From NCBI GenBank assembly GCA_002189035.1, contig NEEC01000017.1, positions 1,364,001 through 1,428,000 of the forward strand: a stretch of DNA of 64,000 bases, in the 5' to 3' direction. Every line of letters begins with the position of its first letter. Within the stretch, counting starts at the first letter, position 1. The notes beneath the pieces were generated by a model. The model was not told the DNA's origin. It saw only the letters and a list, made by a program, of their open reading frames with translations, and ran no database searches. The DNA is from Utricularia gibba. Its lineage: Eukaryota; Plantae; Magnoliophyta. Below are positions 6,797-23,362 of the stretch, one piece after another. Both the position numbers and the translations under genes were made by a program.

Positions 6797-6883
6797 CTGA
6801 CAGAAAGAGGAGCGAGCACACGACGAAGGCAAAGGTAAGAACTTGTTACAAATGCCGTGCGAGTGCTCGCTCTCTTCTGTCAG
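6797..6883 (-). ncRNA. MIR156: MIR156 precursor hairpin; mature 5p UGACAGAAGAGAGCGAGCAC at 6863-6882
   Basis: The reverse complement of 6863-6882 is the canonical miR156 with one substitution (C at position 14). The opposite arm 6797-6819 (GUGCUCGCUCCUCUUUCUGUCAG on minus) is a typical miR156* with the compensating G. Loop about 43 nt. A TAAATA box lies at about 7060 on minus. Confidence 0.95.
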
Positions 6884-9855: not shown

Positions 9856-10630
9856 ATGTCAATGCCAAAAGATGATGAGGTGAACTCTGAGGTATTGCAT
9901 CTCAGCAGATTTTGATGTTTTTTTGGGGTCATTCAACTTTTTTTGTTTCTAAGTCACAACACCATGGAAGATTATCTGATGTGTTGGGTGATCATTCTCT
10001 TCTCCGTCCGATGTATGATGTGAACCTGGGGTGATCTGTTATGACACATTGCTTATTAATGGATCATTTTTGCAGCTCTCTTCAAATGTTTTCAGAGAAC
10101 TTCTAGACTCTATCATTGTTGATGTTGCATCAGAGTCCCACCGCATTGCAAGACTAGGGCTCGATCAGTATCTCGACAACGAGGAGGAGGAGCTGAGGTT
10201 ATCCGCTGAAGCCAGAGCGCGGGGTGATCAGAGCCACAGTGGCGAAGCCAATGGAAAGTACGTGATGGACATCTTTGGCCAAACCCACCCACCAGTTGCA
10301 AGTGAAATATTTGAATGCATGAACTGTGGCCGATCTATAATGGCCGGACGGTTCGCACCTCACCTGGAGAAGTGCATGGGCAAGGTAACCACCCTTCTTC
10401 CTTCCCTTTCCCCATGTCGAAGTTCCTCTTGCAAACATGGCTGAAGTTGGCCCTTTCCCCTAACGTTTCAATGGAAACAGGGCAGGAAAGCTCGACTGAA
10501 ATCAAACAACACAGCCACCGCACGGAGCCGGAGCTCCGGCGGCAGCCCTCATTTGAGCCAGCTTCACTACTCAAATTCCACAGGAGCTTCAATCCATGAG
10601 TATTCAAATGGCACATTTGAGGAGCCATGA
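9856..10630 (+). CDS. SGF11: SAGA-associated factor 11 (deubiquitination module)
   Basis: Exons 9856-9891, 10076-10384, 10481-10630. Motifs ELLDSIIVDVASESHRIARLGLD, DIFGQTHPPVASEIFECMNCGR..AGRFAPHLEKCMGKGRKAR (Sgf11 zinc finger). Confidence 0.95.
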
Positions 10631-10904
10631 ACGTATCGTCATTCACAAACCTGTTCTTGACTTGTAATAAATTTGAACACGTCCTAAAAGTAGCAAAATG
10701 TTATATAAATTGAAATGAAATGTAATGAAACGAAGGCTGCATCGATTTTTATTATTTAATTCCTGTTGGAATTTGGGGGAGGAGAAGGACCGTAATAGCC
10801 CTAATAAATGTGTATCCACTGGTCTACATTGTTGTCTAAATCCATTCAATCCCTTCCTCGTCCGTGCTCTGTCTGAGTTCTCAGTACGACGCCGTTTCAG
10901 AGCT

Positions 10905-12336
10905 ATGGCGAACCAGGGAGCGAAGAAGCGGAAGGAGGAAAACGCTCGCCACATGCAGAGGCTTCTCCTCATTATCGTCGCTTGCAACGTAATTTCACCT
11001 GATTTTATATATTGTGTTTCGAATTCTTCCGGATTGTGTTGGTTTCGATTGTTCGATTGGATTCTGTAGGCTGTGTATGCTGTCGTAAGGCTTGGGTTCT
11101 TCTTCTCGAGTTTCACGTGGAAGCACTGCCTGGGCTTGATTTTGACTTCGCTAGCCTACGTGATTCCCTATCAGCAGCTGGCTACAATGTCCAAGCCGTC
11201 TTATTCCGACTCCGGGGAACTTATCGACGGTGGCTTCGATATGACTACTGGGGGATTTGCGGGTAGGCTATTTGAATGTTAATTGTTTCTTTGCATCGCA
11301 TACTCTGGTTCATGTTTGATAATGGTTTTTGCAGAGCACTTGAGGGATTCCATATTCGTAGCAATTGCTTTAAAGTATAATCAGTGTCTGAATTTCAGAA
11401 GCATTTCTGATTTTATATGAATATTTGTCATTACTTAACAGTCGTTATTGGGGAGATCTACCTTCCGGAATCATCTGCTATCCATACATTGTCTATGATT
11501 TCTATGGTCAAATGTGCTATTTTTCGTGTTTTGCAGATACTTGCATGATGTTATCTACATCACCTGCTTCGTCCAAATGAGTTCGATAATTTCTGATAAG
11601 TTCTGGTACACATACTTGGTGGTACGTTATGCTCCCCCCTTAGTGATCTATTTAAAAGAAGAGGACGAAAGAGCTTTGGATTGTATTGTGAAAGTCAGAA
11701 TTTTGTATCAGTGGCATTGTGCTGTTAACCAAAAGTTGCTTTTGTGAAGGGGCGGTTAAGTGTGTTATATACTGAGATCTATCATTTTCCCCATGATCCA
11801 GTGTGGATGACTGATTCCTTTTCAATGTCTTCTCCTGTAAACTTTTAACCCTACGATGCAATCTTCCATCCATCTCCTCTGATGGATGGTCTTTTGTTTC
11901 TCCTTACTCTGCAGCCACCATCCGTGCAATTGACTTTAAGCTACTAGCAGATGATTGTGGCCAGCGGCTCTCTTTATGTGTGTCGTTGTGAACTGAGTTT
12001 TTTCAGGTCCAATAGGTTTTTGTGTAGGCTTTGTAGAAATACCCTTGTGTACAGGGGTTACTAGCGAGTCCACGATACTAAAATATTCATGAACATTCAG
12101 ATTCCAGGTTTTGCAGCGTATCAACTCTTCGGATTTGTCAAAGGTTTTCTTTCTCATGGGCAAGAGGTACGTAGACATGTTCCTTCCCAGCCCACTATCC
12201 CTTATCTCATGGGATGTGTTTTTTCCAATCACTTCCGGTGCAGGGTGCCGAGGAAGACGAAAAGACCCGCAAGAAGAGAGAAAAGATGGAAAAGAGAGCT
12301 TCCAGACCAAAATTTGTCAAGAGCAGGGCACGATGA
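10905..12336 (+). CDS. TMEM208: TMEM208/SND2 (DUF788) ER membrane protein; -1 frameshift in G-run 11250-11254 as written
   Basis: Exons 10905-10988, 11070-11262, 11537-11621, 12101-12166, 12244-12336. MANQGAKKRKEEN..., GELIDGGFDM, YLHDVIYITCFVQ, and a basic tail EKTRKKREKMEKRASRPKFVKSRAR. One extra G restores the conserved GGICG|Y. Confidence 0.92.
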
Positions 12337-12449
12337 TGATGCCACCAACCACTCATCTCTCTCAATGATGGATCATCTCCTTCCAATCCCCTTTTTTTCC
12401 CATTCGCGTTCGTTCCCTCCACACTGACTGCATAGAGTTTGCCCCATCT

Positions 12450-13560
12450 TTGTAAAAGAGTCTTTTTGGCAACTCATACAAGTTTGTGATCATTTCTGGC
12501 AATAGGTGAATATCTGAGCGATTTCGAAAGGTGACTACTGACTTGTGGTTGCCATTAACATTCGGGAATTGCTGCATCTTCACGATATGCTCATCATGTT
12601 GCATGTTTTAGGTGAATCTGGAGAATTGCCGAGTCCCCTCCACGTTTACGTCATGGTGGTAGGCTGCCTGTGGTCTCGCCTTCTTCTGGCTTCGATTGTA
12701 ATGTCCTGCCATGGACCCGAGTACAAGACCATCTGAAAACGCTTGGACCAGACCCAATAACGGAAGACTTATTGTCTGTAACATAGGATTTTAGTCATAA
12801 AAACAAGAAATTAGCTGAATGGTTGTCCCTTTTTTCTTTTTCTGTCCTGGATATTGTTTCAACAAAAATATTAATACTGATAAGAAGCACACAAGCAGCT
12901 GGAGGCGAAGAATTCAAGTACAATAATATATTTGTAAACAAATGCTGAGATTTCAGACAACCGGAGAAGAGCAACGAAACCGATGCTGCAGCAAGCAACA
13001 CACAACGAAGACCACAGGTTCGGATAAAGAAGACAGAAGATTGAGCCACCCCGCCAATATCACCACCACCACCGCCGCCGCCGCCGCGGGAGAACAATGA
13101 GAAAGAAAGAAAGAAGCGAAGCCCACCTCATCCGAGTAGCAGAAGAAGAAGCAAAGAAAAAAAGAAAACCCTTATACCTCCCAGTTAACCCTCAACCGCC
13201 GCCGTCTCCGGCAGGGGAACCCAGCCGAGCATAACCAACGGAACCCCATTCGGGCCAAACTTCAAGCCACCGCACAATCCACTTCCAGTATGAGAAGCCC
13301 CATTGCAATGCAAACAAGAAAAGGAAAAGAGAGAGGTGTGCGTTGTCTTGTATTGGCGTCCAACAGAGGTTGTTAGAGAAAGAAGGGGTCGGAAGAATGA
13401 ATGAATGCTGCGTGTGTGTTCCTTCTTGTTGCAGAAACGTCTGCAGTTTTGCTGTCCTTCTGGAGTCTGGAGTGTAAGAGAAGGCAGGTAAGTAACCCAC
13501 TCAACAAATTTTGCTTCCTCCCCCAGACTGAGACACCACCACCATACATTTATAATAAAT
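12450..13560 (-). ncRNA. Putative lncRNA containing a miR171 target-mimic-like site; boundaries approximate
   Basis: TATA-like TATATA/TATAAA at about 13550-13595 on minus. Splice-like signals include GAG|GTATAAG at 13177 and TTTTCAG| at about 12733. Only short, unrecognisable ORFs. Convergent with TMEM208. Confidence 0.45.
13039..13063 (-). other. miR171-complementary site with a 3-nt central bulge (endogenous target mimic motif)
   Basis: Minus strand 5'-GUGAUAUUGGC GGGGU GGCUCAAUC-3' versus the SCL6/HAM site GAUAUUGGCGCGGCUCAAUC. Both flanks pair perfectly; the centre has one G:U plus three extra nucleotides. No partner arm for a MIR171 hairpin was found nearby. Confidence 0.7.
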
Positions 13561-14605
13561 AAATAATACACTGCACCTCCTCACACCATATAATACCCTT
13601 ATAATAATATTAATATTAATAATCATTTTTATTATTTCACCATTACTAGGGCATGTCCTATTATGGGCCTAGATCCTTTCCAAAAAAAAAAGAACCCCCA
13701 CGTGTGTTGGAATGCAAACCAAGTTTAGTAATCTAACCCAGAGAGATTCCCCTTTTTGCCCTCCACGGATTGATGAAATCCCAGTTATGCCCTTTTCATG
13801 TACTGCTCTAGTGTTTGAGGGTACGGCTTTTGCTGCAGCCACCTTGTAATAAGCAAAGAATAATATTAAATTCAGCTCCATCCCATTTAAAACTAGGGTA
13901 AAATTAAATTAAGTTAAAAAAAGTAAAAAGAAAATAACATGGGAAACATGGGATGGCCCCGCGCCCTACGCCTTTAGAATCCTTCAATTCCCCAACCAAC
14001 TTATGCTCTTGGTGGATGGATGAGAAGGGAAGTCAGTCCAATTCCGAACATCAATCAAATTCGATCTATTAGAAATTTGATCATTTGCGAGAAAATTAGA
14101 CATAACTTATTGTATAAGAGAAGTTGTACGAGTGATCATTTTTCTAAATAAATCGGATGAAATTAATTAAAATAAATAAAATTAAATAAAGGGATGTGCT
14201 AAATTAAATAACAAAATTATCGAGGTATCTAATTTATGATATTAAATATCAAAGTTGATGATTAGCATATGTTCTTTAATATAAAGTAACTTTTATTTGG
14301 AATAATAGAATAAAAAGGGTCAAAGGCGTGGGGCTTTACTATTTTTACCTACCGGATGAGGTGCACAATTTGGTCCATTATTGTTTTTGGAAAGTATTAC
14401 GAAAGGGTGACGTCGTTTTCACGCACGTCCACCATTCAATTCAATAATTCCGTACTTTAAATGTTCCACCTCCGGCACTAAATAGCAGACGCGTCCTCCA
14501 AGTTTCTCCTATTTGCAATTAAGACACCAGATCTATTACAAATTTGATAATCTACTCCTACATGAGAAAATTGTACATCGATAATGCAAAAATTTTAATT
14601 CATTG

Positions 14606-14979
14606 TATGAAATAGATTGTATGAGTAATCACTTTTCTAAATGAACTTTCGACGTTCCCCAAGTCCACTTCTCCATGCAGGGCTATTATAGTAAAATAAT
14701 ATTCGAATTTCGAATTTTTAATATTTGTGAGCTACATTATATTTTTATTTCATTATAATATATAGTATTACTCTTATATCAAATTTTAACTTATTATATG
14801 AAATAGATTGTACGATTCACTACTTTTCTACATGAAATTATGTCGCCCCCAAGTCCATTTCTCCAGTCAGGGCTATTATTGTAAATAATATTCAAATTTT
14901 GAAACAAAACCAAATTTTGAATTTTTAATATTTTTATTAAAAATTCAAAATTTATATTATATATTATTACTCTTATATC
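14606..14979. repeat. Diverged tandem duplication, period about 191 bp
   Basis: TATGAAATAGATTGTA...CCCCAAGTCCA.TTCTCCA..CAGGGCTATTAT...TATTACTCTTATATC starts at 14606 and again at 14797. A related motif occurs near 14115. Confidence 0.8.
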
Positions 14980-15915
14980 GTTATAAATCTTCATCTATCA
15001 CTACCGTTTTGTCGTTCCCAACATCCTTATTGATTTTCTCTATGGGTGTGTTTCAGTGTTTGGTTGGGAGAAATTAATATATTGAAAAATATTTAATAAA
15101 AATATTAGATAGAAAACGAATATATTTAAATAGGCAAATGATAACTAAAAAGTATTTTAAATTGATAATACATATTTTTTAAATGCATATCTAATATCGA
15201 TTTAATTGAACAAATCGAACAAAAAAGGTTGTAAAAGACAAAATTGTTTAGAAGAATAAGAATGATCGGGGATGATTAAAAAAATATTTTAATATATTAT
15301 TCAAAAAAAGATAAAATTATTTTATATGACTTCTAATATTCAAATTACACCTTTATTAATTTCATTTTATTTTGAAATTTTAAGTATTTCAAAATAAAAA
15401 ATCATTTTTTTAAATTACAATATTTGATCTATTTTTATCTTACAGTTGAACAATTTAACTTATATAAAATCTAATAAAAAAAGTTTATCAATGAATTGAT
15501 TTTATGTCATTCCAACAAAAAAATTTACTTGAACTAACTATCATAACTAATATTGGTACACATATTTCAATGCAATTATTAAAAATTGCGAAATATTATT
15601 ACAAGTGATACTTTGGACAAGTTTTGGTGGAAATGTCATGAAATGAATCATTGGTAAATTTCTTGATTGAATTTTGCACAAATTAAAATATTAAACTGTA
15701 AAATAAAAATGGATTAAACAGTCTAAATTAAAAAACATTTTTTCTCTATTTCAAATATCAAATTTATAATTTCGATTTTTTAATAATCACTTTGAATGGT
15801 AGGTGAAATTTCTGTGTATCTATCTCTTCAAGCATTCTGTTGTTTGTAGAAGCAAAAGTATTGCAACCCATGTGGAAAATACACACCAGTTTCAGAAGGA
15901 ACAACCGGCGATGCA

Positions 15916-18900
15916 TCAGCAGTTGATCCCGCATTGCTTTGTGTCAGGCCCCTTGGTTTTGAGTATAAAGGGATCGATTCTCACCCAAAGCAAGGAGAAG
16001 ATGGAAGCCAGGAGTATCGACCAGATGACGACGATAGTGGGTGTTCTGTTCTGCCTGCCCATCAGGCCTTTGAGGAAGGGATAGAGATGAACGATGACCC
16101 AGAATGCGAAGAAGAGCTTTCCGAAAAGGGGACCCCAAGTTTGGTATCCATTGTTGATTGCATCGGATATGCCAGCAACAACACCCACCATGTTGATTAT
16201 GAGAATCGTGGTTGGGGGTATGAGGAGTGTTGTCCATTTGAAGGTGTATAGCTCTCCAAACTCTTCGTCATCCGATGCCTTGGATGTGACTGTGAAGTTT
16301 GTGTCTATGCCTGCTAGGATTTTCAGAAGGCCTTGCACAACCGCAAAGAGGTGAGCTGATATTCCTCCTATTACCCAGAACTGCTCGTTCCTCCACCATT
16401 CCTCAATGCTGACGCCACTCCACCTTAGCTCCAGGATGCCCGTGGCGAATATCGAGAGGAAGAGTCCTATGAATACGAGGCTTGCCAGGGTGCTTATCTG
16501 GATCAAGGGAGAAACATATCTTTAGCTCGCATGGCAGTGTGTGAATTTAGTGTCAAGTGAGTGGCTGCTTCTCCTAGTGAGTTGAGTACCTCTGGCATTA
16601 TGAACTTTCCTGTGAGCAGGCAAACTGCTGGAAGGGTGCAGTAGGCAAGAAGTGGTATAGAAGTAAAGGGGTAGATTGTTGTGTTAACGTATGCAAATCG
16701 TTCCAACCATTTGAGGTTTCCTTCCTTGTAGCCATAGATCAGAGGACTATGGCGACTGAAGAAGATTTCAACAGATCCTAGAGCCCATCGGAGCACTTGA
16801 TTCAGACGGTCGGACAAGTTGATCGGAGCAGACCCTTTGAAGGCCGCCCTTTTGGGGTTACAGTAAATAGATCTCCAACCACGGCAGTGCATTTTAAAGC
16901 CTGTTAAGATGTCTTCTGTGATGGAGCCATATATCCATCCTAGCTGCATCAGCAGAGTTAGATTAAGAATGTCTAGTATCTGATGTGCAGGATTTAAATC
17001 ATACCTCTGTACCCCAGTCTGTCTTGTCTTCATAGCCACAGCTTATGACATGTATGGCCTCTTTAAGCAAAGCTGCTGGACTTGAGGAAGGGGGAACTCC
17101 ACCATCCACCATCAAAGTTGAAGTCACAAATACTGGTGATTGCCCGAATTTACTTTCAAAGTTCATTTGAGACTTTAGTAACTCCTTGTCATCATCAAAT
17201 CCTGGATTGCAGAAAAGTTTTAATGTATTTTCCATTCTTATTGTATTAGGTAGAGAGATTGATGGAAACCTTGAGCTCCATCTTGGTCGCCAAATGCATC
17301 CTGTAAAGTGATTTTCTTGCGCCGTCCAAAACATGGGCAGCAATCACAACTTACCATTTTTGGACGCTTGGGGCCCTTGGGAGGCTCATAGCCATATAGC
17401 GCTTGCCTTCTGAAGATGCATCCTGTTCCAACATAGACTGGACCCTGGATCCCATCCAGGCCTTTCATGTTGATCTGTGTGAAAATGAGCAAAAGAAGGT
17501 GTTATTAGCATAACTTGACTGCTTTCTGTATGGCTTCAGGCACGAGTGTCAAAACAGTTTCTCAGGAACTTACATCGAAGAACACTGTATTTCTGTTGGC
17601 GTATCTGTCATGCCGGTCAATGCCATCAAATCTTTGAGGAAACTGGACATAACACACTTTCCTCCCTGATTGAGGATCCATTAAGAAGCACATTGCTTCC
17701 CGCACAGCCTTGCTGTTGTTTATATAATGATCACAGTCCAAGTTCAGCATGAATGGAGCATTTGTGAGAACCCCAGAAACCCGGACCTGAAAATTTCCAA
17801 GTTATGTGGTTGGACTGCTGTAAACTTGCTACCGTGAAGAGCCATTGATCATACCAGGGCGTTTATTGCACCTGCTTTCTTGTGATGCTGGAAAGCTGGC
17901 CTCTTTTCTCGAGAAACGTAAACTAGGCGAGGAAGTTCATGACCTTCTGCATCAAAACCTCCATTCTGACCTAAAAAGACTTGGATCATACCAGGATGAT
18001 CTTTGGTATTGTTTCCAGGCCATGGTGTGCCATCTTGCATGATCCATCCTCCAGGTGAACCCTTTGTGGCTTTGGCAACCATTGCATTTATTCTAACTTT
18101 GAACTCCTCGTATTCTCTCTGTCACAAAGCATTCTTGCATCAAACCATGATACTCATATTTCTTCCAAAAAAAACTTCATGGTGTACCTTCATAGCTCTT
18201 CTCTCCTTGACAAAAGTGGGCTGCACTTTGTCCTTCAGGTAGTCCACCTTCTCTGCAAAGTACATCTCTGGTGCTCGAGGCTCTATCGAAAATTTCTTGC
18301 AGAAAGGAACCCATTTTCGAGAAAACTCTGCTGTTTCTGATAGTGCTTCAAAGGTGCACATGGAGGCGCCATCATCAGAGAGGTAACATGATATTTTATC
18401 AACAGGGTAGTCCATCGCCAAAATTGAGAGAACAGTGTTGGCTGTAACAAGGGGTGGTTCCTTCAAGGGGTCAACTGTGCTAACAAAAACATCTACTGGT
18501 GAAAGCATGTTTGGTTCGCCTTCCTTCTCGTATCTGCAAGAAAAACAAGTGTGATCGAGCTGCACTTGGCTATCCTTGTTTCTGGTGTTCAGGTTACAGT
18601 TGATTCATTTACCTGTGAGAGAGGCGATCAAGATAAGTCTCACGGTCGATGGGGAACCACTTTGGGAACTGATCAAGGATCCAGGAAAAGGCGAACCAGA
18701 CTTCACAGATAATGGAAGTCAGCCAAAGGCCAATGGCATCGTGGACGGGGTTCAAGATCCTGTACCGCAGGAAAATGGCTAAAACCAGCAACCGAGCTGC
18801 GATCACCATGCGGTAAGGATTCACTTTGCTTGATGCTATGGGAACTTTTCTTGAAAGTGGTTGTCTTGATTCATCATTACTGCAGTTTGACACAACGAAA

Positions 18901-19877
18901 CTCTACTAAGTCAAATCTAACATCTACCTGTTTCAGTAGGAAAAATAGTTGTAAGTATAGGGGGATATGAATCAAGAGAAGATACATCATTGCATCCATG
19001 TCCTCGTAATCATCCATCCTCTCTTTCCATCCCATTTCCTTCTGATCATCCCATCTTGCACTTGTTGCATCACTAGGCTCGTCTGAGAATGAATATGGAT
19101 GAATTCGCTTGTGCAGCGTGGAGACAGGCGCTTGCTCTCTGTATGCAGTATTTGACAGAGTGATTTCTCCACTCACCTGCAAGTAAGTCAAGTTTAGTAT
19201 CATTTGATGTTGTATGTGGTACCGGTAAGTATCTCTTGTTTGCTGTTTACAGGAACGGATCTTCCTCCTGCGATAACGGGTGGGTACTGTTGGCTGCTGT
19301 CATCGTCTTCAGGTCCTCTTCCATAACTCATTTTCCCATGGAGCATATCAACTACTTCCGTGTGCCTTTTCTGATCTTCAATGTTGAACTCATGCTCAAT
19401 GTCGTCAATGTCTTCCTCATCATCGTCTCCTTCAACCCTTGGACTACCTTCACGCCAAGTGAAAAGAAAACATTGGAAATTGATTGCAAATAGACAGGAA
19501 AAGAGCATCAATTCTACATCATGTAGGAGCACCTTTGAGGCGCTTGTATCTGGTATTGCACTGTGGGCAAAGCTGGCTTCCTTCCCGTCTCTCGTACTCG
19601 TAGCACGGCCTGCATACGGGGAAGCCGCACTCGTTGCAGGCGACGAACAGCTCGCCGTCAACTGTGAGGCCAACGGCGTCCCCACAGATCTCACAAACTT
19701 GCCCACTTAGATTCTTCATTTGCTTCGGCTGCAACAGCCACCAACAACACGACAATGTCACAAGGAACAGGAAGCAGCTCTCTTGGGGACCATGAAACTC
19801 ACCTCCTCATGTCCGTGAATGACGACGAGCTCGTTCCGGTTGTGTGATCCGGCCACAAGCCCTGCACTTGCCTCCAT
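15916..19877 (-). CDS. CESA7: Cellulose synthase A7 (IRX3-type, secondary wall)
   Basis: Starts [29 protein letters not shown] zinc finger CEICGD...CPQC. Catalytic motifs DDG, DCD, TED and QVLRW are intact. Ends [14 protein letters not shown]. All exons splice in frame. Confidence 0.97.
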
Positions 19878-20998
19878 TTCCGGAGCCTGCAGGAGATGAT
19901 GGATGCAGAGTGAAAACTGGGGATGAAGTTAACAACCTTCCTTTTTAATAAAGTCTTGAGCAGAAGTTCAGTAGTAGCTTTTCGTTTTTTAGTTGCTGGG
20001 TCTACATTGCCTTCAAGCTAAGCTTCTTCTGTTGCAACCACCATCTCTCTTCAGTCTCCAGCCACCTTTACGTAAAAATAAATCTTGCATTACAAATGTT
20101 ATACTTTTTCTTGTAATATAATTTCTTTCTCAACGTGACACAACTGTTCCGCGGGCAAGAACATTCTTTGTCCTTTTTCTTGTTCTCAGGTGCCATGCCG
20201 GTCTGGCTTTGGACAGGGGGAGACCAGATTTGGTGCCCAAGGTGTCAATTTTCCTTCGATATCTGTAGACGGGGGGACAACAAACAGCAACGCGTCGTAC
20301 CAGGAGTCCAGATTTGATGTGCAGTGAAGGCATGATATCAAGAAAAAGTAATGAAGTGCTTGTGAACAAGAAGCAAGATGAGTGTTCCATTGACTGTAAT
20401 GGCATTGAAATCCTCATGATAATCTTCGCAGTCTTCGCTGGTTATTCTCCGGCCATTCTTTGCACGCAACCGGTATTCGTGTGTTGGCATTACTATTATT
20501 TCTTGTTTTGATGGTCTTTCAATGGCGGAAAAGGGTATTCTTGTTTTTGTTTTTTTGTTGATTGGTTCGCTGAGATTCATTTCTTTTAATCACCTTCTTT
20601 TCTCGTTGTCAGATTGAAGCCAGGTACTGTCCGGTCGTGTTGATCCTCGTCTCCGGTGTTCGCTGGTTTCATCAGAACTTGAAAAAAAACTTCACACGAA
20701 ACTGAGCCTTGGGCCACGTTGGGCTCGACCCACTACAAGATAGAGTCCAGGCGTGACTTCAATTTCTGGAAACTGAATTCCTGATCCAGTTCTTCCCTAT
20801 TTTCGTCTTGGTTGCCGGTTATTCCAATATCCAACGTCATTGATTCTTTTTGTTTTGCGGATTGAAACAGCAGTTGTTGTATCCATCTGTTTCCCATTTT
20901 TGAGATTGAGTTGGTGTTGCCATGATTTGCTGTTCCATGAAGCTTCTTTTTTGAGGTTTTTGTGTGCTGGTTTAGATGAATGTTTTGTCACAATTTCA

Positions 20999-23362
20999 AT
21001 GGTTCCTAGAGCAGTTTCTGCTCAAAGGGATCGAAGCTTCCTCTTGGGTTTGATCAATGCAGCCACCTCAGTTTCCCACCTCCATCAATCCCATGCCCAA
21101 ATCATTCATAGAAATCTCATCAACGATCGTAGTATCGTAACCAAGCTCATTCAGAAGCTTCTCGACTTCAAAGCCGTCGACCATGCGAAACGCATCTTTG
21201 GTAGCTTGGTTTCTCCTGACCTATTCCTGTACAATGTCCTCATTAAAGGACTCAAAGACGACCCATTTGCCTCCTTGCGTGTTTACAGGACTCTGTTGCA
21301 GGGGACTGCTTTTAAGCCCGATAATTTTACTTACTCGTTCATCGTTGGTGCGTTTTCTGGATTTTCTTCAGCTGGGTTGGAGAGAGTCGCAGTTTTGGTC
21401 CATGGGCATGCGATAGTTTCTGGGTTTGGCTCAGACGTGTATGTGGGCTCGGCGTTGATTGAAATGTACATGAGTTTCTCAAGGATTAGCGTTGCACATA
21501 AGGTGTTTGATATCGTGTCTGAGCCGGATACGGTGCTTTGGAACACAATCTTCTCTGGTTTGGTGAAAAATGGTTGCTTTGATGATGTGCCTCGGATTTT
21601 TCGTAATATGGTTAACAGTGGTGTGCGATTTGATTCGACGTCGCTGGCGGTGGTGCTCTCTGGTTTTGCTGAACTGCAAGATGAGAGGGCAGGTTTGATG
21701 GTTCAGGCGTTGGCTTTGAAGGTGGGTTGCCATTTCCATGATCATGTTCTTACATGTTTGGTCTCCTTGTATTCTAAATGTGGAGACATTGCCATGGCAA
21801 AGTTGTTGTTTGGGTTGATATCAACTCCAGATCTGGTCGCATACAATGCAATGATTTCTGGGTTTTCTTCAAATAATGACATGGAATCAGCCCTTCATAT
21901 TTTCCATGAATTGCTTTCATCAGGTTTCAAGGTAAGCTCCAGTACGATAGTTGCTTTGGTTCCTGCATTCTACCCATTTGGTCGATTACATCTTACATTG
22001 GCAATTCAGAGCTTTTGTGTCAAGTGCTGTTTCATTTTACATGCCTCAGTTTCAACTGCGTTAGTGACAGTTTATAGTCGACTGAACGAGCTGCATCTAG
22101 CTAGGCGGCTATTTGATGAATCATCTGACAAAAGTGTGGCATCATGGAATGCCATGATATCAGGATATGCTCAGAATGGGCAGACTGAAATGGCAATATC
22201 TCTCTTCCATGAAATGCAGAAGCTTAATCTTTGTCCAAATCCAGTGACAATTACAAGCATTCTCTCAGCATGTGCTCAACTGGGTGCCTTATCTCTGGGA
22301 AAATGGGTACACAACTTGATAAAAAATGCAGGTTTTGAGTCCAACATCTATGTGTCAACTGCCTTGATCGACATGTATTCAAAATGTGGAAGTATAGAGG
22401 AGGCCAGGAGACTGTTTGATTGTATGAAGGAAAAGAATGCTGTCACTTGGAATGCCATGATATCCGGGTATGGACTTCATGGCCATGGCAATGAAGCACT
22501 AAATCTGTACCAAAAAATGCAACTCTCAGGAATTTCTCCTACAAGAGTTACATTTTTATCGATTTTGCATGCTTGTAGCCATGCGGGTCTGGTGGAAGAA
22601 GGAGAAAAAATGTTCTCCTCTATGATCCATGATCATGGCCTGAAGCCAATCTCCGAGCATTACGCGGCCATGGTCGACATCTACGGCCGAGCCGGGAAAC
22701 TACATGGTGCTCTGGAGTTCATAAACAAGATGCCTATTGAACCTGGCCCTGCTGAGTGGGGCTCCCTGCTTGGTGCTTGTATGATTCACAAGAACATAGA
22801 TCTTGCCCATTTTGCTTCTCGCAAACTGTTCGCTTTGGAACCGGAGAATGTCGGATACCATGTTCTACTCTCTAACATATACTCCATCAGCCAGAATTTC
22901 CCACAGGCTGCTACATTGCGAAGAATGGTGAAGACAAAGCATCTGATGAAGACTCCAGGCTGCACTCTGATTGAGGTTAAAGGAAATGCCCATGTCTTCA
23001 CCTCCAATGATCGATCCCACCCTCAGTCCAGAGATATATACGCTGCCCTGGAAGATATAATGCTGAGAATGAAGCACTCAGGGTACACTGTGGAAACACT
23101 TACAGCATTGCATGATGTGGAAGAAGAAGAGAAGGAGATGATAGTGAAGGTTCACAGTGAGAAACTGGCGATTGCCTTTGGGATTCTCATGTCTGGAGAA
23201 GGTGAAGAGATCAGGATAATCAAGAACCTGAGGGTGTGCTTGGATTGCCATAACTTCACCAAGTTTGTTTCTAGGATTAGTGGGAGAGTGATCATTGTTA
23301 GGGATGCTAACAGGTTTCACCATTTTGCAAATGGAGTTTGTTCATGTGGAGACTACTGGTAG
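20999..23362 (+). CDS. MEF29: PLS-DYW pentatricopeptide repeat RNA-editing factor, MEF29/PPR2263-like (intronless)
   Basis: PLS repeats (WNAMISGY, TITSILSACAQLGALSLGKWVH), E/E+ domains, and a DYW domain with HSEKLAIAF, LRVCLDCH and terminal CSCGDYW. First ATG at 20999. Ortholog assignment is from recalled similarity to At4g30700. Confidence 0.9.
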   Translation: MVPRAVSAQRDRSFLLGLINAATSVSHLHQSHAQIIHRNLINDRSIVTKLIQKLLDFKAVDHAKRIFGSLVSPDLFLYNVLIKGLKDDPFASLRVYRTLLQGTAFKPDNFTYSFIVGAFSGFSSAGLERVAVLVHGHAIVSGFGSDVYVGSALIEMYMSFSRISVAHKVFDIVSEPDTVLWNTIFSGLVKNGCFDDVPRIFRNMVNSGVRFDSTSLAVVLSGFAELQDERAGLMVQALALKVGCHFHDHVLTCLVSLYSKCGDIAMAKLLFGLISTPDLVAYNAMISGFSSNNDMESALHIFHELLSSGFKVSSSTIVALVPAFYPFGRLHLTLAIQSFCVKCCFILHASVSTALVTVYSRLNELHLARRLFDESSDKSVASWNAMISGYAQNGQTEMAISLFHEMQKLNLCPNPVTITSILSACAQLGALSLGKWVHNLIKNAGFESNIYVSTALIDMYSKCGSIEEARRLFDCMKEKNAVTWNAMISGYGLHGHGNEALNLYQKMQLSGISPTRVTFLSILHACSHAGLVEEGEKMFSSMIHDHGLKPISEHYAAMVDIYGRAGKLHGALEFINKMPIEPGPAEWGSLLGACMIHKNIDLAHFASRKLFALEPENVGYHVLLSNIYSISQNFPQAATLRRMVKTKHLMKTPGCTLIEVKGNAHVFTSNDRSHPQSRDIYAALEDIMLRMKHSGYTVETLTALHDVEEEEKEMIVKVHSEKLAIAFGILMSGEGEEIRIIKNLRVCLDCHNFTKFVSRISGRVIIVRDANRFHHFANGVCSCGDYW

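What the first reader, a model, noticed from the sequence alone, without database searches (positions are those of the whole stretch)
13039..13063. Candidate endogenous target mimic of miR171 in an apparently non-coding transcript
Seen: the minus strand reads GUGAUAUUGGC-GGGGU-GGCUCAAUC. Against UGAUUGAGCCGCGCCAAUAUC, positions 2-10 and 12-21 pair perfectly, 11 is G:U, and 3 nt bulge out next to the cleavage site. Against the 3-nt-shifted isoform UUGAGCCG(C/U)GCCAAUAUCAC, positions 1-7 and 10-20 pair and the bulge falls at 9/10. There is no partner arm, so it is not a MIR171 hairpin. The flanking translation does not resemble a GRAS gene, so it is not an SCL6 relic. The host has TATA and splice signals but no real ORF. 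Established: IPS1/miR399 defines this non-cleavable 3-nt-bulge architecture, and miR171 targets SCL6/HAM/LOM GRAS factors, which interact with miR156-targeted SPLs. Inference: an IPS1-like decoy tuning meristem/branching control, about 6 kb from a MIR156 on the same strand. Caveat: if the donor at 13177 is used with a distal acceptor the site is intronic, so intron retention could act as a switch.
Basis: partly seen in the sequence, partly recalled or inferred. Interest (0 to 1): 0.78.

Follow-up and report, generated by a model that had tools for sequence, protein, structure and literature searches.

The report
Probable microRNA-171 decoy RNA
A short, weakly expressed stretch with no protein-coding potential, lying between two ordinary plant genes, carries a near-perfect binding site for microRNA 171 interrupted by a small bulge that should stop it being cut; it is probably one more natural "decoy" RNA of a known kind, not a new mechanism.

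Summary
The minus strand at 13061-13039 reads GATATTGGCG-GGGT-GGCTCAATC. That is a miR171 complement with perfect pairing at miRNA positions 2-10 and 12-21, and either a G:U at 11 plus a 3-nt bulge or a 4x1 internal loop.

- **Chance:** none of 100 shuffles of the window gives such a site. At most about 0.2 as good are expected per Gb.
- **Not a hairpin or gene relic:** there is no MIR171 partner arm and no GRAS relic.
- **Transcription:** spliced TMEM208 contigs show the runs are RNA, and they have no cover from 13573 to 15400. In them a separate low-depth unit covers about 12898-13478. Only one contig (one run) spans the site, and it is unspliced. The strand is not shown; a TATAAAT at 13555-13549 favours minus.
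- **Coding:** no credible ORF.
- **Relatives:** plant-like non-coding contigs from metagenomes carry the same split site, with only about 30 nt alike. Conservation at the orthologous locus could not be tested because local synteny is rearranged.

miR171 decoys are already known (Lilium eTM171a/b, rice MIKKI). This scan had already noted two others on other DNA of this genome. Verdict: a new member of a known kind. The link to the MIR156 6 kb away and the intron-retention switch are unsupported.

The parts
13039..13063 (-). miR171 target-mimic site. Core is GATATTGGCG-GGGT-GGCTCAATC at 13061..13039. The two extra 5' bases GT (13063-13062) pair with the 3-nt-shifted miR171 isoform.
13064..13098 (-). 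(GGC)n(GGT)n simple repeat directly 5' of the site. The RNA contigs of runs X1 and X2 break inside it.
12898..13478 (-). Transcribed non-coding unit, given as the union of the RNA contigs: 12898-13418 unspliced in X5, 13099-13457 in X1, 13099-13438 in X2, 13246-13478 in X7. The strand is inferred, not shown.
   Evidence: no ORF with a family match
13549..13555 (-). TATAAAT box about 70 nt upstream of the furthest contig end. Candidate core promoter of the minus-strand RNA.
   Evidence: sequence reading; inference
13176..13177 (-). It is not used in any contig laid here.

Best explanation
An independent, lowly expressed long non-coding RNA of at least about 0.58 kb is transcribed, most likely from the minus strand. 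It would start about 30-70 nt downstream of the TATAAAT at 13555-13549 and end near 12898, tail to tail with TMEM208.

It carries one miR171 binding site whose central 3-4 unpaired nucleotides, opposite miRNA positions 11-12, should prevent AGO1 slicing. The RNA would then hold or destabilise miR171 instead of being cut (target mimicry, as in IPS1/miR399). That would modestly relieve the HAM/SCL6-type GRAS targets where it is expressed.

Shown: the site and its pairing; transcription of the interval; absence of coding potential, of a hairpin and of a GRAS relic; the same site design in other plants' non-coding DNA. Inferred: strand, non-cleavability, sequestration, and any phenotype.
For: - **Site quality:** unique in the window, 0 of 100 shuffles. 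It passes the usual mimic rules with penalty 1.5. At most about 0.2 such sites are expected per Gb. The duplex keeps 80% of the perfect-target energy.
- **Transcription:** the runs are RNA, because TMEM208 contigs are spliced GT..AG and cover is zero from 13573 to 15400. Separate contigs cover 12898-13478, and one 521-nt contig crosses the site unspliced.
- **Independence from TMEM208:** the depth ratio to TMEM208 varies from 0.035 to 0.67 between runs. In X5 the unit is covered while TMEM208's last exon is not.
- **Promoter:** TATAAAT lies upstream on the minus strand.
- **Non-coding:** no family match in any ORF and only very short ATG ORFs.
- **Relatives:** metagenome-borne plant-like non-coding contigs L101, L122 and L056 have the same split site, with similarity confined to 28-35 nt.
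- **Precedent:** miR171 decoys work in Lilium and rice (PMC9171120, PMC5599236).
- **Scan notes, not tested here:** two further miR171 decoy candidates were reported in this genome.
Against: - The strand of the RNA is not shown.
- In 3 of 4 runs no contig covers 12905-13071. The X1 and X2 contigs stop in the GGC/GGT repeat 10-20 nt before the site, so presence of the site in the RNA rests on one contig of one run.
- Depth is low (about 3-7, against 10-156 for TMEM208 contigs). Decoys need favourable stoichiometry, a point discussed in PMC5599236.
- The site is no more accessible than an average 23-nt window of the RNA: opening cost 10.9 kcal/mol, which is the median.
- Positions 10 and 11 can still pair (C:G and G:U), so the bulge sits one step 3' of the IPS1 position.
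- No orthologous locus could be examined, so conservation of this copy is unknown.
- Over a whole-genome scan of many miRNA families, a few chance sites of this quality are expected.
Confidence: 0.5

Rival explanations
1. The site is real and transcribed on the right strand but has no functional effect. It would be a neutral or decaying copy, or a chance match, in a low-abundance intergenic transcript that cannot titrate miR171.
For: Contig depth is low relative to the neighbouring gene. Accessibility is only average. There is no evidence of conservation at this locus. Chance sites of slightly lower quality are expected at about 1-15 per Gb per isoform.
Against: A site of this quality is expected at most 0.2 times per Gb, yet it falls inside one of the few transcribed non-coding units. 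It has the same loop start (G) and the same GT 5' extension as the sites in L101 and L122. The scan reports three miR171 sites of this kind in one genome.
Confidence: 0.25
2. The transcript is made from the plus strand, either as an extended or read-through 3' end of TMEM208 or as an independent plus-strand RNA. The RNA would then contain the miR171-like sense sequence, not a binding site, and there would be no decoy.
For: Contigs carry no strand information. The unit begins only 15 nt beyond the end of the TMEM208 contig (12883 against 12898). TMEM208 is on the plus strand.
Against: In X5 the unit is assembled while TMEM208's last exon (12610-12883) has no cover, and the depth ratio varies about 20-fold between runs. 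The contigs stop at 13418-13478, just inside a minus-strand TATAAAT and short of the AT-rich tract a plus-strand poly(A) site would need. The sense strand is CT-rich, as in the other mimic loci.
Confidence: 0.2
3. The site is a fossil: either the star arm of a decayed MIR171 hairpin or a fragment of a HAM/SCL6 GRAS gene that acquired a 3-nt insertion.
For: One reading frame gives ILAGWLN, which resembles the ILARLN encoded by canonical targets (sequence reading of the ORF). GT precedes the site, as in many GRAS targets.
Against: No miR171-like arm lies within 3 mismatches in 64 kb. The fold is no better than shuffles. No ORF has a GRAS (PF03514) match even at E up to 10. Flank identity to 89 GRAS contexts averages 8.6 of 30 with a maximum of 12, which is random level.
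Confidence: 0.03
4. The site is intronic and removed from the mature RNA (donor at 13177, acceptor near 12986 or further downstream). It would act, if at all, only on intron retention.
For: GT at 13177 and a polypyrimidine tract followed by CAG at about 12986 are present.
Against: The X1, X2 and X5 contigs run through 13177 unspliced. The 521-nt X5 contig is colinear from 13418 to 12898. No joint is listed in this interval, whereas all TMEM208 joints were detected.
Confidence: 0.02

Closest known systems
IPS1/At4 family, the miR399 target mimic (Franco-Zorrilla et al. 2007; cited from PMC8910752 and PMC5599236)
   Same: A non-coding RNA with one miRNA site, near-perfect arms, and a 3-nt central bulge that blocks slicing. 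Only the site region is conserved between family members, while the flanks differ.
   Different: A different miRNA (miR171, not miR399). The bulge can be drawn after position 11 or 12 rather than 10/11. No inducing condition is known. Expression appears low.
Lilium pumilum lpu-eTM171a/b (PMC9171120)
   Same: Endogenous transcripts that bind miR171. In Lilium, overexpression lowered miR171 by about 50% and raised SCL6, and site mutants did not.
   Different: They are 1.4-1.9 kb monocot transcripts. The window's RNA has not been tested.
Rice MIKKI, a retrotransposon-derived miR171 sponge (PMC5599236)
   Same: A non-coding RNA that decoys miR171 and protects HAM/SCL mRNAs.
   Different: MIKKI is TE-derived, spliced, very abundant in roots, and blocks cleavage through mismatches at positions 11 and 14 rather than a bulge. 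The window unit is single-copy within the window, unspliced, and of low depth.
Computationally predicted plant eTMs (Wu et al. 2013, Plant Physiol.; recalled from memory, paper not held)
   Same: The rule set used here is theirs as I recall it: seed 2-8 perfect, 3-nt bulge at positions 9-12, at most 3 other mismatches.
   Different: I could not check whether a miR171 eTM of this lineage is listed there.
Two other miR171 decoy candidates noted by this scan in the same genome (s1-243406 beside GER1; s1-267398 between INTS3 and HDDC2)
   Same: The same miRNA, the same 3-nt-bulge design, and a short expressed non-coding host.
   Different: They lie on other DNA pieces with other neighbours.

Membership tests
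Endogenous miRNA target mimic (IPS1-type eTM) | Perfect pairing to miRNA positions 2-8 | tested here: met
   Met for the miR171a type. For the 3-nt-shifted isoform, position 8 is a G:U, so it is not met for that isoform.
Endogenous miRNA target mimic (IPS1-type eTM) | A 3-nt bulge in the target opposite miRNA positions 9-12, with no other bulge | tested here: met
   A GGG bulge after position 11 or 12, or a GGGT loop opposite G11.
Endogenous miRNA target mimic (IPS1-type eTM) | At most 3 mismatches or G:U pairs outside the bulge | tested here: met
   One mismatch (position 1) and one G:U (position 11).
Endogenous miRNA target mimic (IPS1-type eTM) | The site lies in a mature, non-coding transcript of the site-bearing strand | tested here: inconclusive
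   The interval is transcribed and one unspliced contig spans the site. No ORF has a family match. The strand is not shown, and 3 of 4 runs lack cover over the site.
Endogenous miRNA target mimic (IPS1-type eTM) | The site is conserved between species while the flanks diverge | tested here: inconclusive
   Ten loci around PPR or SGF11 orthologues in Paulownia, Sesamum, Buddleja, Olea, Handroanthus, Andrographis, Erythranthe and Solanum hold no site, but none contains TMEM208, so none is the orthologous interval. Unplaced plant-like contigs L101, L122 and L056 share only the site.
Endogenous miRNA target mimic (IPS1-type eTM) | Not sliced by the miRNA; lowers miRNA activity and raises target mRNAs | not testable with these tools
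   Needs degradome or 5' RACE data and transgenic or deletion lines.
MIR171 precursor hairpin | A complementary miR171 arm within about 50-150 nt, forming a stable stem-loop | tested here: not met
   No arm within 3 mismatches. Fold z-score is -0.14. Rfam finds no MIR171 match in 1-30000 at E up to 5.
HAM/SCL6 GRAS gene or pseudogene (a true miR171 target) | GRAS-domain coding sequence around the site | tested here: not met
   No Pfam GRAS match at E up to 10. Flank identity to 89 GRAS contexts is at random level.

The most novel reading that the evidence does not exclude
The window locus, the two other loci this scan noted in the genome, and the unplaced contigs L101, L122 and L056 would all descend from one ancient eTM171 gene. 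That gene would predate the monocot-eudicot split and persist as a small multi-copy family that sets the miR171 threshold in meristems. The hint is the shared G-rich 5' flank (GGCGGTG...GT(A/G)GT) before the site and the loop beginning with G in the three eudicot-like copies.
Probability: 0.12. Interest if true: 0.55.

Novelty: new member of a known kind. Interest (0 to 1): 0.3.

Why it matters
miR171 and its HAM/SCL6 targets control shoot meristem maintenance, branching, chlorophyll synthesis and somatic embryogenesis (review PMC8910752). A natural decoy adds a layer that tunes this module and could be a breeding or editing handle, as shown for Lilium embryogenesis and rice root growth (PMC9171120, PMC5599236).

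This copy on its own adds little that is new. Its value is as the third such locus in one genome. That makes it possible to test whether plants keep small families of miR171 decoys and whether low-abundance copies matter.

Tried and rejected
1. **Synteny via the PPR (At4g30700-type) gene.** In Paulownia and Sesamum the PPR and the CESA orthologue converge (CESA C-terminus 95% identical). In the window they diverge, so the interval is rearranged and not comparable.
2. **Synteny via SGF11.** Seven loci were fetched and none has TMEM208 next door.
3. **Reaching TMEM208 orthologues.** The protein is spliced and cannot be given by reference. Intron 1 ends in an in-frame stop. The exon-2 piece found nothing within the length limits. 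I did not type the protein by hand.
4. **Rfam at gathering thresholds.** Nothing was found. The MIR156 match appears only in the E-value scan.
5. **GRAS-relic and hairpin-relic readings.** Both rejected.
6. **Most metagenome hits with 2-6 nt gaps.** These lie on GC-rich, coding-dense contigs and are taken as bacterial chance matches.
7. **Wu et al. 2013.** The paper could not be read.
8. **Scan index.** A look-up by sequence returned nothing.

Full report
**1. The observation**

The minus strand at 13063..13039 reads GT-GATATTGGCG-GGGT-GGCTCAATC. The split pattern occurs once in the window and in none of 100 dinucleotide-preserving shuffles.

I scanned both strands of the window with the usual target-mimic rules: perfect pairing at miRNA positions 2-8, a 3-nt bulge between positions 9 and 12, and at most 3 penalty points elsewhere. 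This is the only hit.
- For the UGAUUGAGCCGCGCCAAUAUC type the penalty is 1.5: a mismatch at position 1 and a G:U at position 11.
- Because of the G run, the unpaired bases can be drawn as GGG after position 11 or 12, or as a GGGT loop opposite G11.

The miR171 sequences came from the finding and from memory, so I checked them against data. Ninety-three canonical plant target sites recovered from metagenome contigs give the consensus GATATTGGCG-C-GGCTCAATC-A.

The predicted duplex keeps 80% of the energy of a perfect target, -31.1 against -39.0 kcal/mol.

With the window's base composition, a site this good is expected about 1e-5 times per window and at most about 0.2 times per Gb per isoform. 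Sites at the rule limit are expected about 15 times per Gb. The match is therefore well beyond chance for the window. Over a whole-genome scan of many miRNA families it is not proof on its own.

**2. What it is not**

- **Not a MIR171 hairpin.** No miR171-like arm lies within 3 mismatches anywhere in the 64 kb. The 303 nt around the site fold no better than shuffles, z -0.14. Rfam shows no MIR171 match at E up to 5 in 1-30000.
- **Not a GRAS gene relic.** None of six ORFs on either strand has a GRAS match or any significant Pfam match at E up to 10. The 30-nt flanks match 89 real GRAS target contexts at random level, mean 8.6 of 30 and maximum 12.
- **Not repeated within the window**.

**3. 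Surroundings**

- **Plus strand, upstream:** an SGF11 gene (first exon 10070-10384; 89% identical to Paulownia) and a TMEM208 gene. Its exons were mapped from RNA joints to about 10890-10988, 11070-11262, 11537-11621, 12101-12166, 12244-12530 and 12612-12883. Five of the six reported joints are GT..AG on plus; the exon 2-3 joint is irregular.
- **Minus strand, above the site:** an AT-rich spacer and a cellulose synthase gene at 15916-19761.
- **Plus strand, further on:** a DYW-type PPR gene at 20999-23359, an orthologue of At4g30700. Its best hits are Lamiales at 67-74% identity.
- **MIR156:** a hairpin lies at 6797-6883 on the minus strand, 61.8 bits against a gathering score of 62. It is 6.2 kb from the site, but SGF11 and TMEM208 on the other strand lie between them. 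They are separate units, and nothing links them functionally.

**4. Transcription**

Nine public runs from three studies hold the stretch. I laid contigs of four runs on 10400-15400. The runs are RNA in practice, because the TMEM208 contigs are spliced and there is no cover at all from 13573 to 15400.

Separate low-depth contigs cover the following intervals.

| Run | Interval | Depth | Note |
|---|---|---|---|
| X1 | 13099-13457 | 6 | record extends 20 letters into the repeat |
| X2 | 13099-13438 | 5.7 | record extends 27 letters into the repeat |
| X7 | 13246-13478 | 3.4 | |
| X5 | 12898-13418 | 7 | colinear, 521 nt |

The X5 contig crosses the site and the proposed donor at 13177 without a joint. 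The X1 and X2 contigs also run through 13177, and no joint is listed in this interval.

**Weaknesses.** Contigs show no strand. In X1, X2 and X7 the bin 12905-13071 is empty, and the X1 and X2 contigs stop inside the GGC/GGT repeat at about 13072-13079. Presence of the site in RNA thus rests on one contig of one run. The break inside a simple repeat looks like an assembly break rather than an RNA end, but that is inference.

**Independence from TMEM208.** Two things suggest it: a roughly 20-fold variation of the depth ratio (0.035 to 0.67), and X5, where this unit is covered while TMEM208's last exon is not.

**Strand.** The minus strand is favoured for three reasons, all inference.
- A TATAAAT lies at 13555-13549, about 70 nt beyond the furthest contig end.
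- The contigs stop short of the AT-rich tract that a plus-strand poly(A) site would need.
- The minus-strand sequence is CT-rich, like the sense strand of the other mimic loci.

I put the minus strand at roughly 75-80%. The only ATG ORFs inside the unit are very short.

**5. Relatives**

The orthologous interval could not be reached.
- In Paulownia and Sesamum the PPR gene and the CESA orthologue (C-terminal exon 95% identical) converge. In the window they diverge, so the neighbourhood is rearranged.
- Seven SGF11 loci were fetched from Paulownia, Olea, Handroanthus (two), Andrographis, Erythranthe and potato. None has TMEM208 next door.
- None of the ten fetched loci holds a miR171 mimic site. 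This says nothing about conservation, because none is the right interval.
- TMEM208 itself could not be used as a query. It is spliced, an in-frame stop closes intron 1, and the exon-2 piece found nothing within the length limits.

A pattern scan of metagenome contigs gave 95 canonical target sites with a one-base gap and a mix of sites with longer gaps. Most of the latter lie on GC-rich contigs and are probably bacterial chance matches. Three are AT-rich or plant-like contigs without long ORFs:
- L101, loop GAAA
- L122, loop GGAC
- L056, loop CAATA

BLAST among these and the window finds similarity only over the 28-35 nt around the site. Two of them share the GT extension and a GT(A/G)GT motif before it. 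This is the "conserved site in divergent flanks" pattern expected for target mimics. It shows that the design recurs in other plants, not that this copy is conserved.

The scan's own notes list two other miR171 decoy candidates on other pieces of this genome, one said to be conserved beside GER1 in asterids and poplar. I could not see their sequences, so I treat this as a lead.

**6. Mechanism**

The best reading (confidence 0.5) is an IPS1-type decoy. The RNA binds miR171-loaded AGO1. The unpaired bases next to the scissile position prevent slicing. The complex is unproductive, or leads to miRNA decay, so HAM/SCL6 mRNAs are spared where the RNA is expressed.

Points against a strong effect:
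- Contig depth is low.
- Site accessibility is only average, with an opening cost of 10.9 kcal/mol equal to the transcript median.
- Positions 10 and 11 can still pair, so non-cleavability is probable but unproven.

**7. Comparison and novelty**

Target mimicry was defined by IPS1/miR399. For miR171 specifically, Lilium eTM171a/b lowered miR171 and raised SCL6 in a site-dependent way (PMC9171120). The rice retrotransposon transcript MIKKI acts as a miR171 sponge (PMC5599236). Both are summarised in the review PMC8910752.

The window locus meets the three sequence criteria for an eTM. The transcript and strand criterion and the conservation criterion are inconclusive, and the functional criteria cannot be tested here. 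It is a new member of a known kind, and the third such candidate this scan has reported in this genome.

Noticed in passing
window 6797-6883 (-): A MIR156 hairpin scoring 61.8 bits, just under Rfam's gathering score of 62. Its mature arm reads TGACAGAAGAGAGCGAGCAC, with C instead of the usual T at position 14; the opposite arm compensates.
   Followed up: partly
window 11250-11262 and 11528-11540 (+), TMEM208 exon 2/3 junction: RNA contigs of three runs join 11254 to 11530 with two extra letters (GA) and non-canonical ends. Splicing the window sequence at the nearest GT..AG (11263/11536) gives a frameshift and a 106-aa product, whereas the contig sequence keeps the conserved frame. This could be a homopolymer error in the assembly, an allele, or an unusual splice.
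   Followed up: partly
window 15916-23359, compared with L001 and L002: The CESA and PPR (At4g30700-type) genes diverge in the window but converge in Paulownia and Sesamum. SGF11 is followed by TMEM208 here, but by other genes in the seven SGF11 loci examined from other species. The TMEM208-decoy block therefore sits in a rearranged neighbourhood.
   Followed up: partly
L101:1048-1070 (+), L122:269-291 (-), L056:605-628 (-): Three metagenome contigs that look like plant non-coding DNA carry miR171 mimic sites with loops GAAA, GGAC and CAATA. Only about 30 nt are similar to the window. Their source plants and neighbouring genes are unknown.
   Followed up: partly
window 13131-13060 (-): A 23-codon ATG ORF (MRWASLL...RRRRRWWW) ends with a TGA that is part of the GTGATATT start of the miR171 site, so a ribosome would stop exactly at the site. 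Probably coincidence.
   Followed up: no
window 12531-12611 (+): TMEM208 has an 81-nt intron in its 3' UTR. It is spliced in runs X1 and X2, but a contig in X5 reads through the donor.
   Followed up: no
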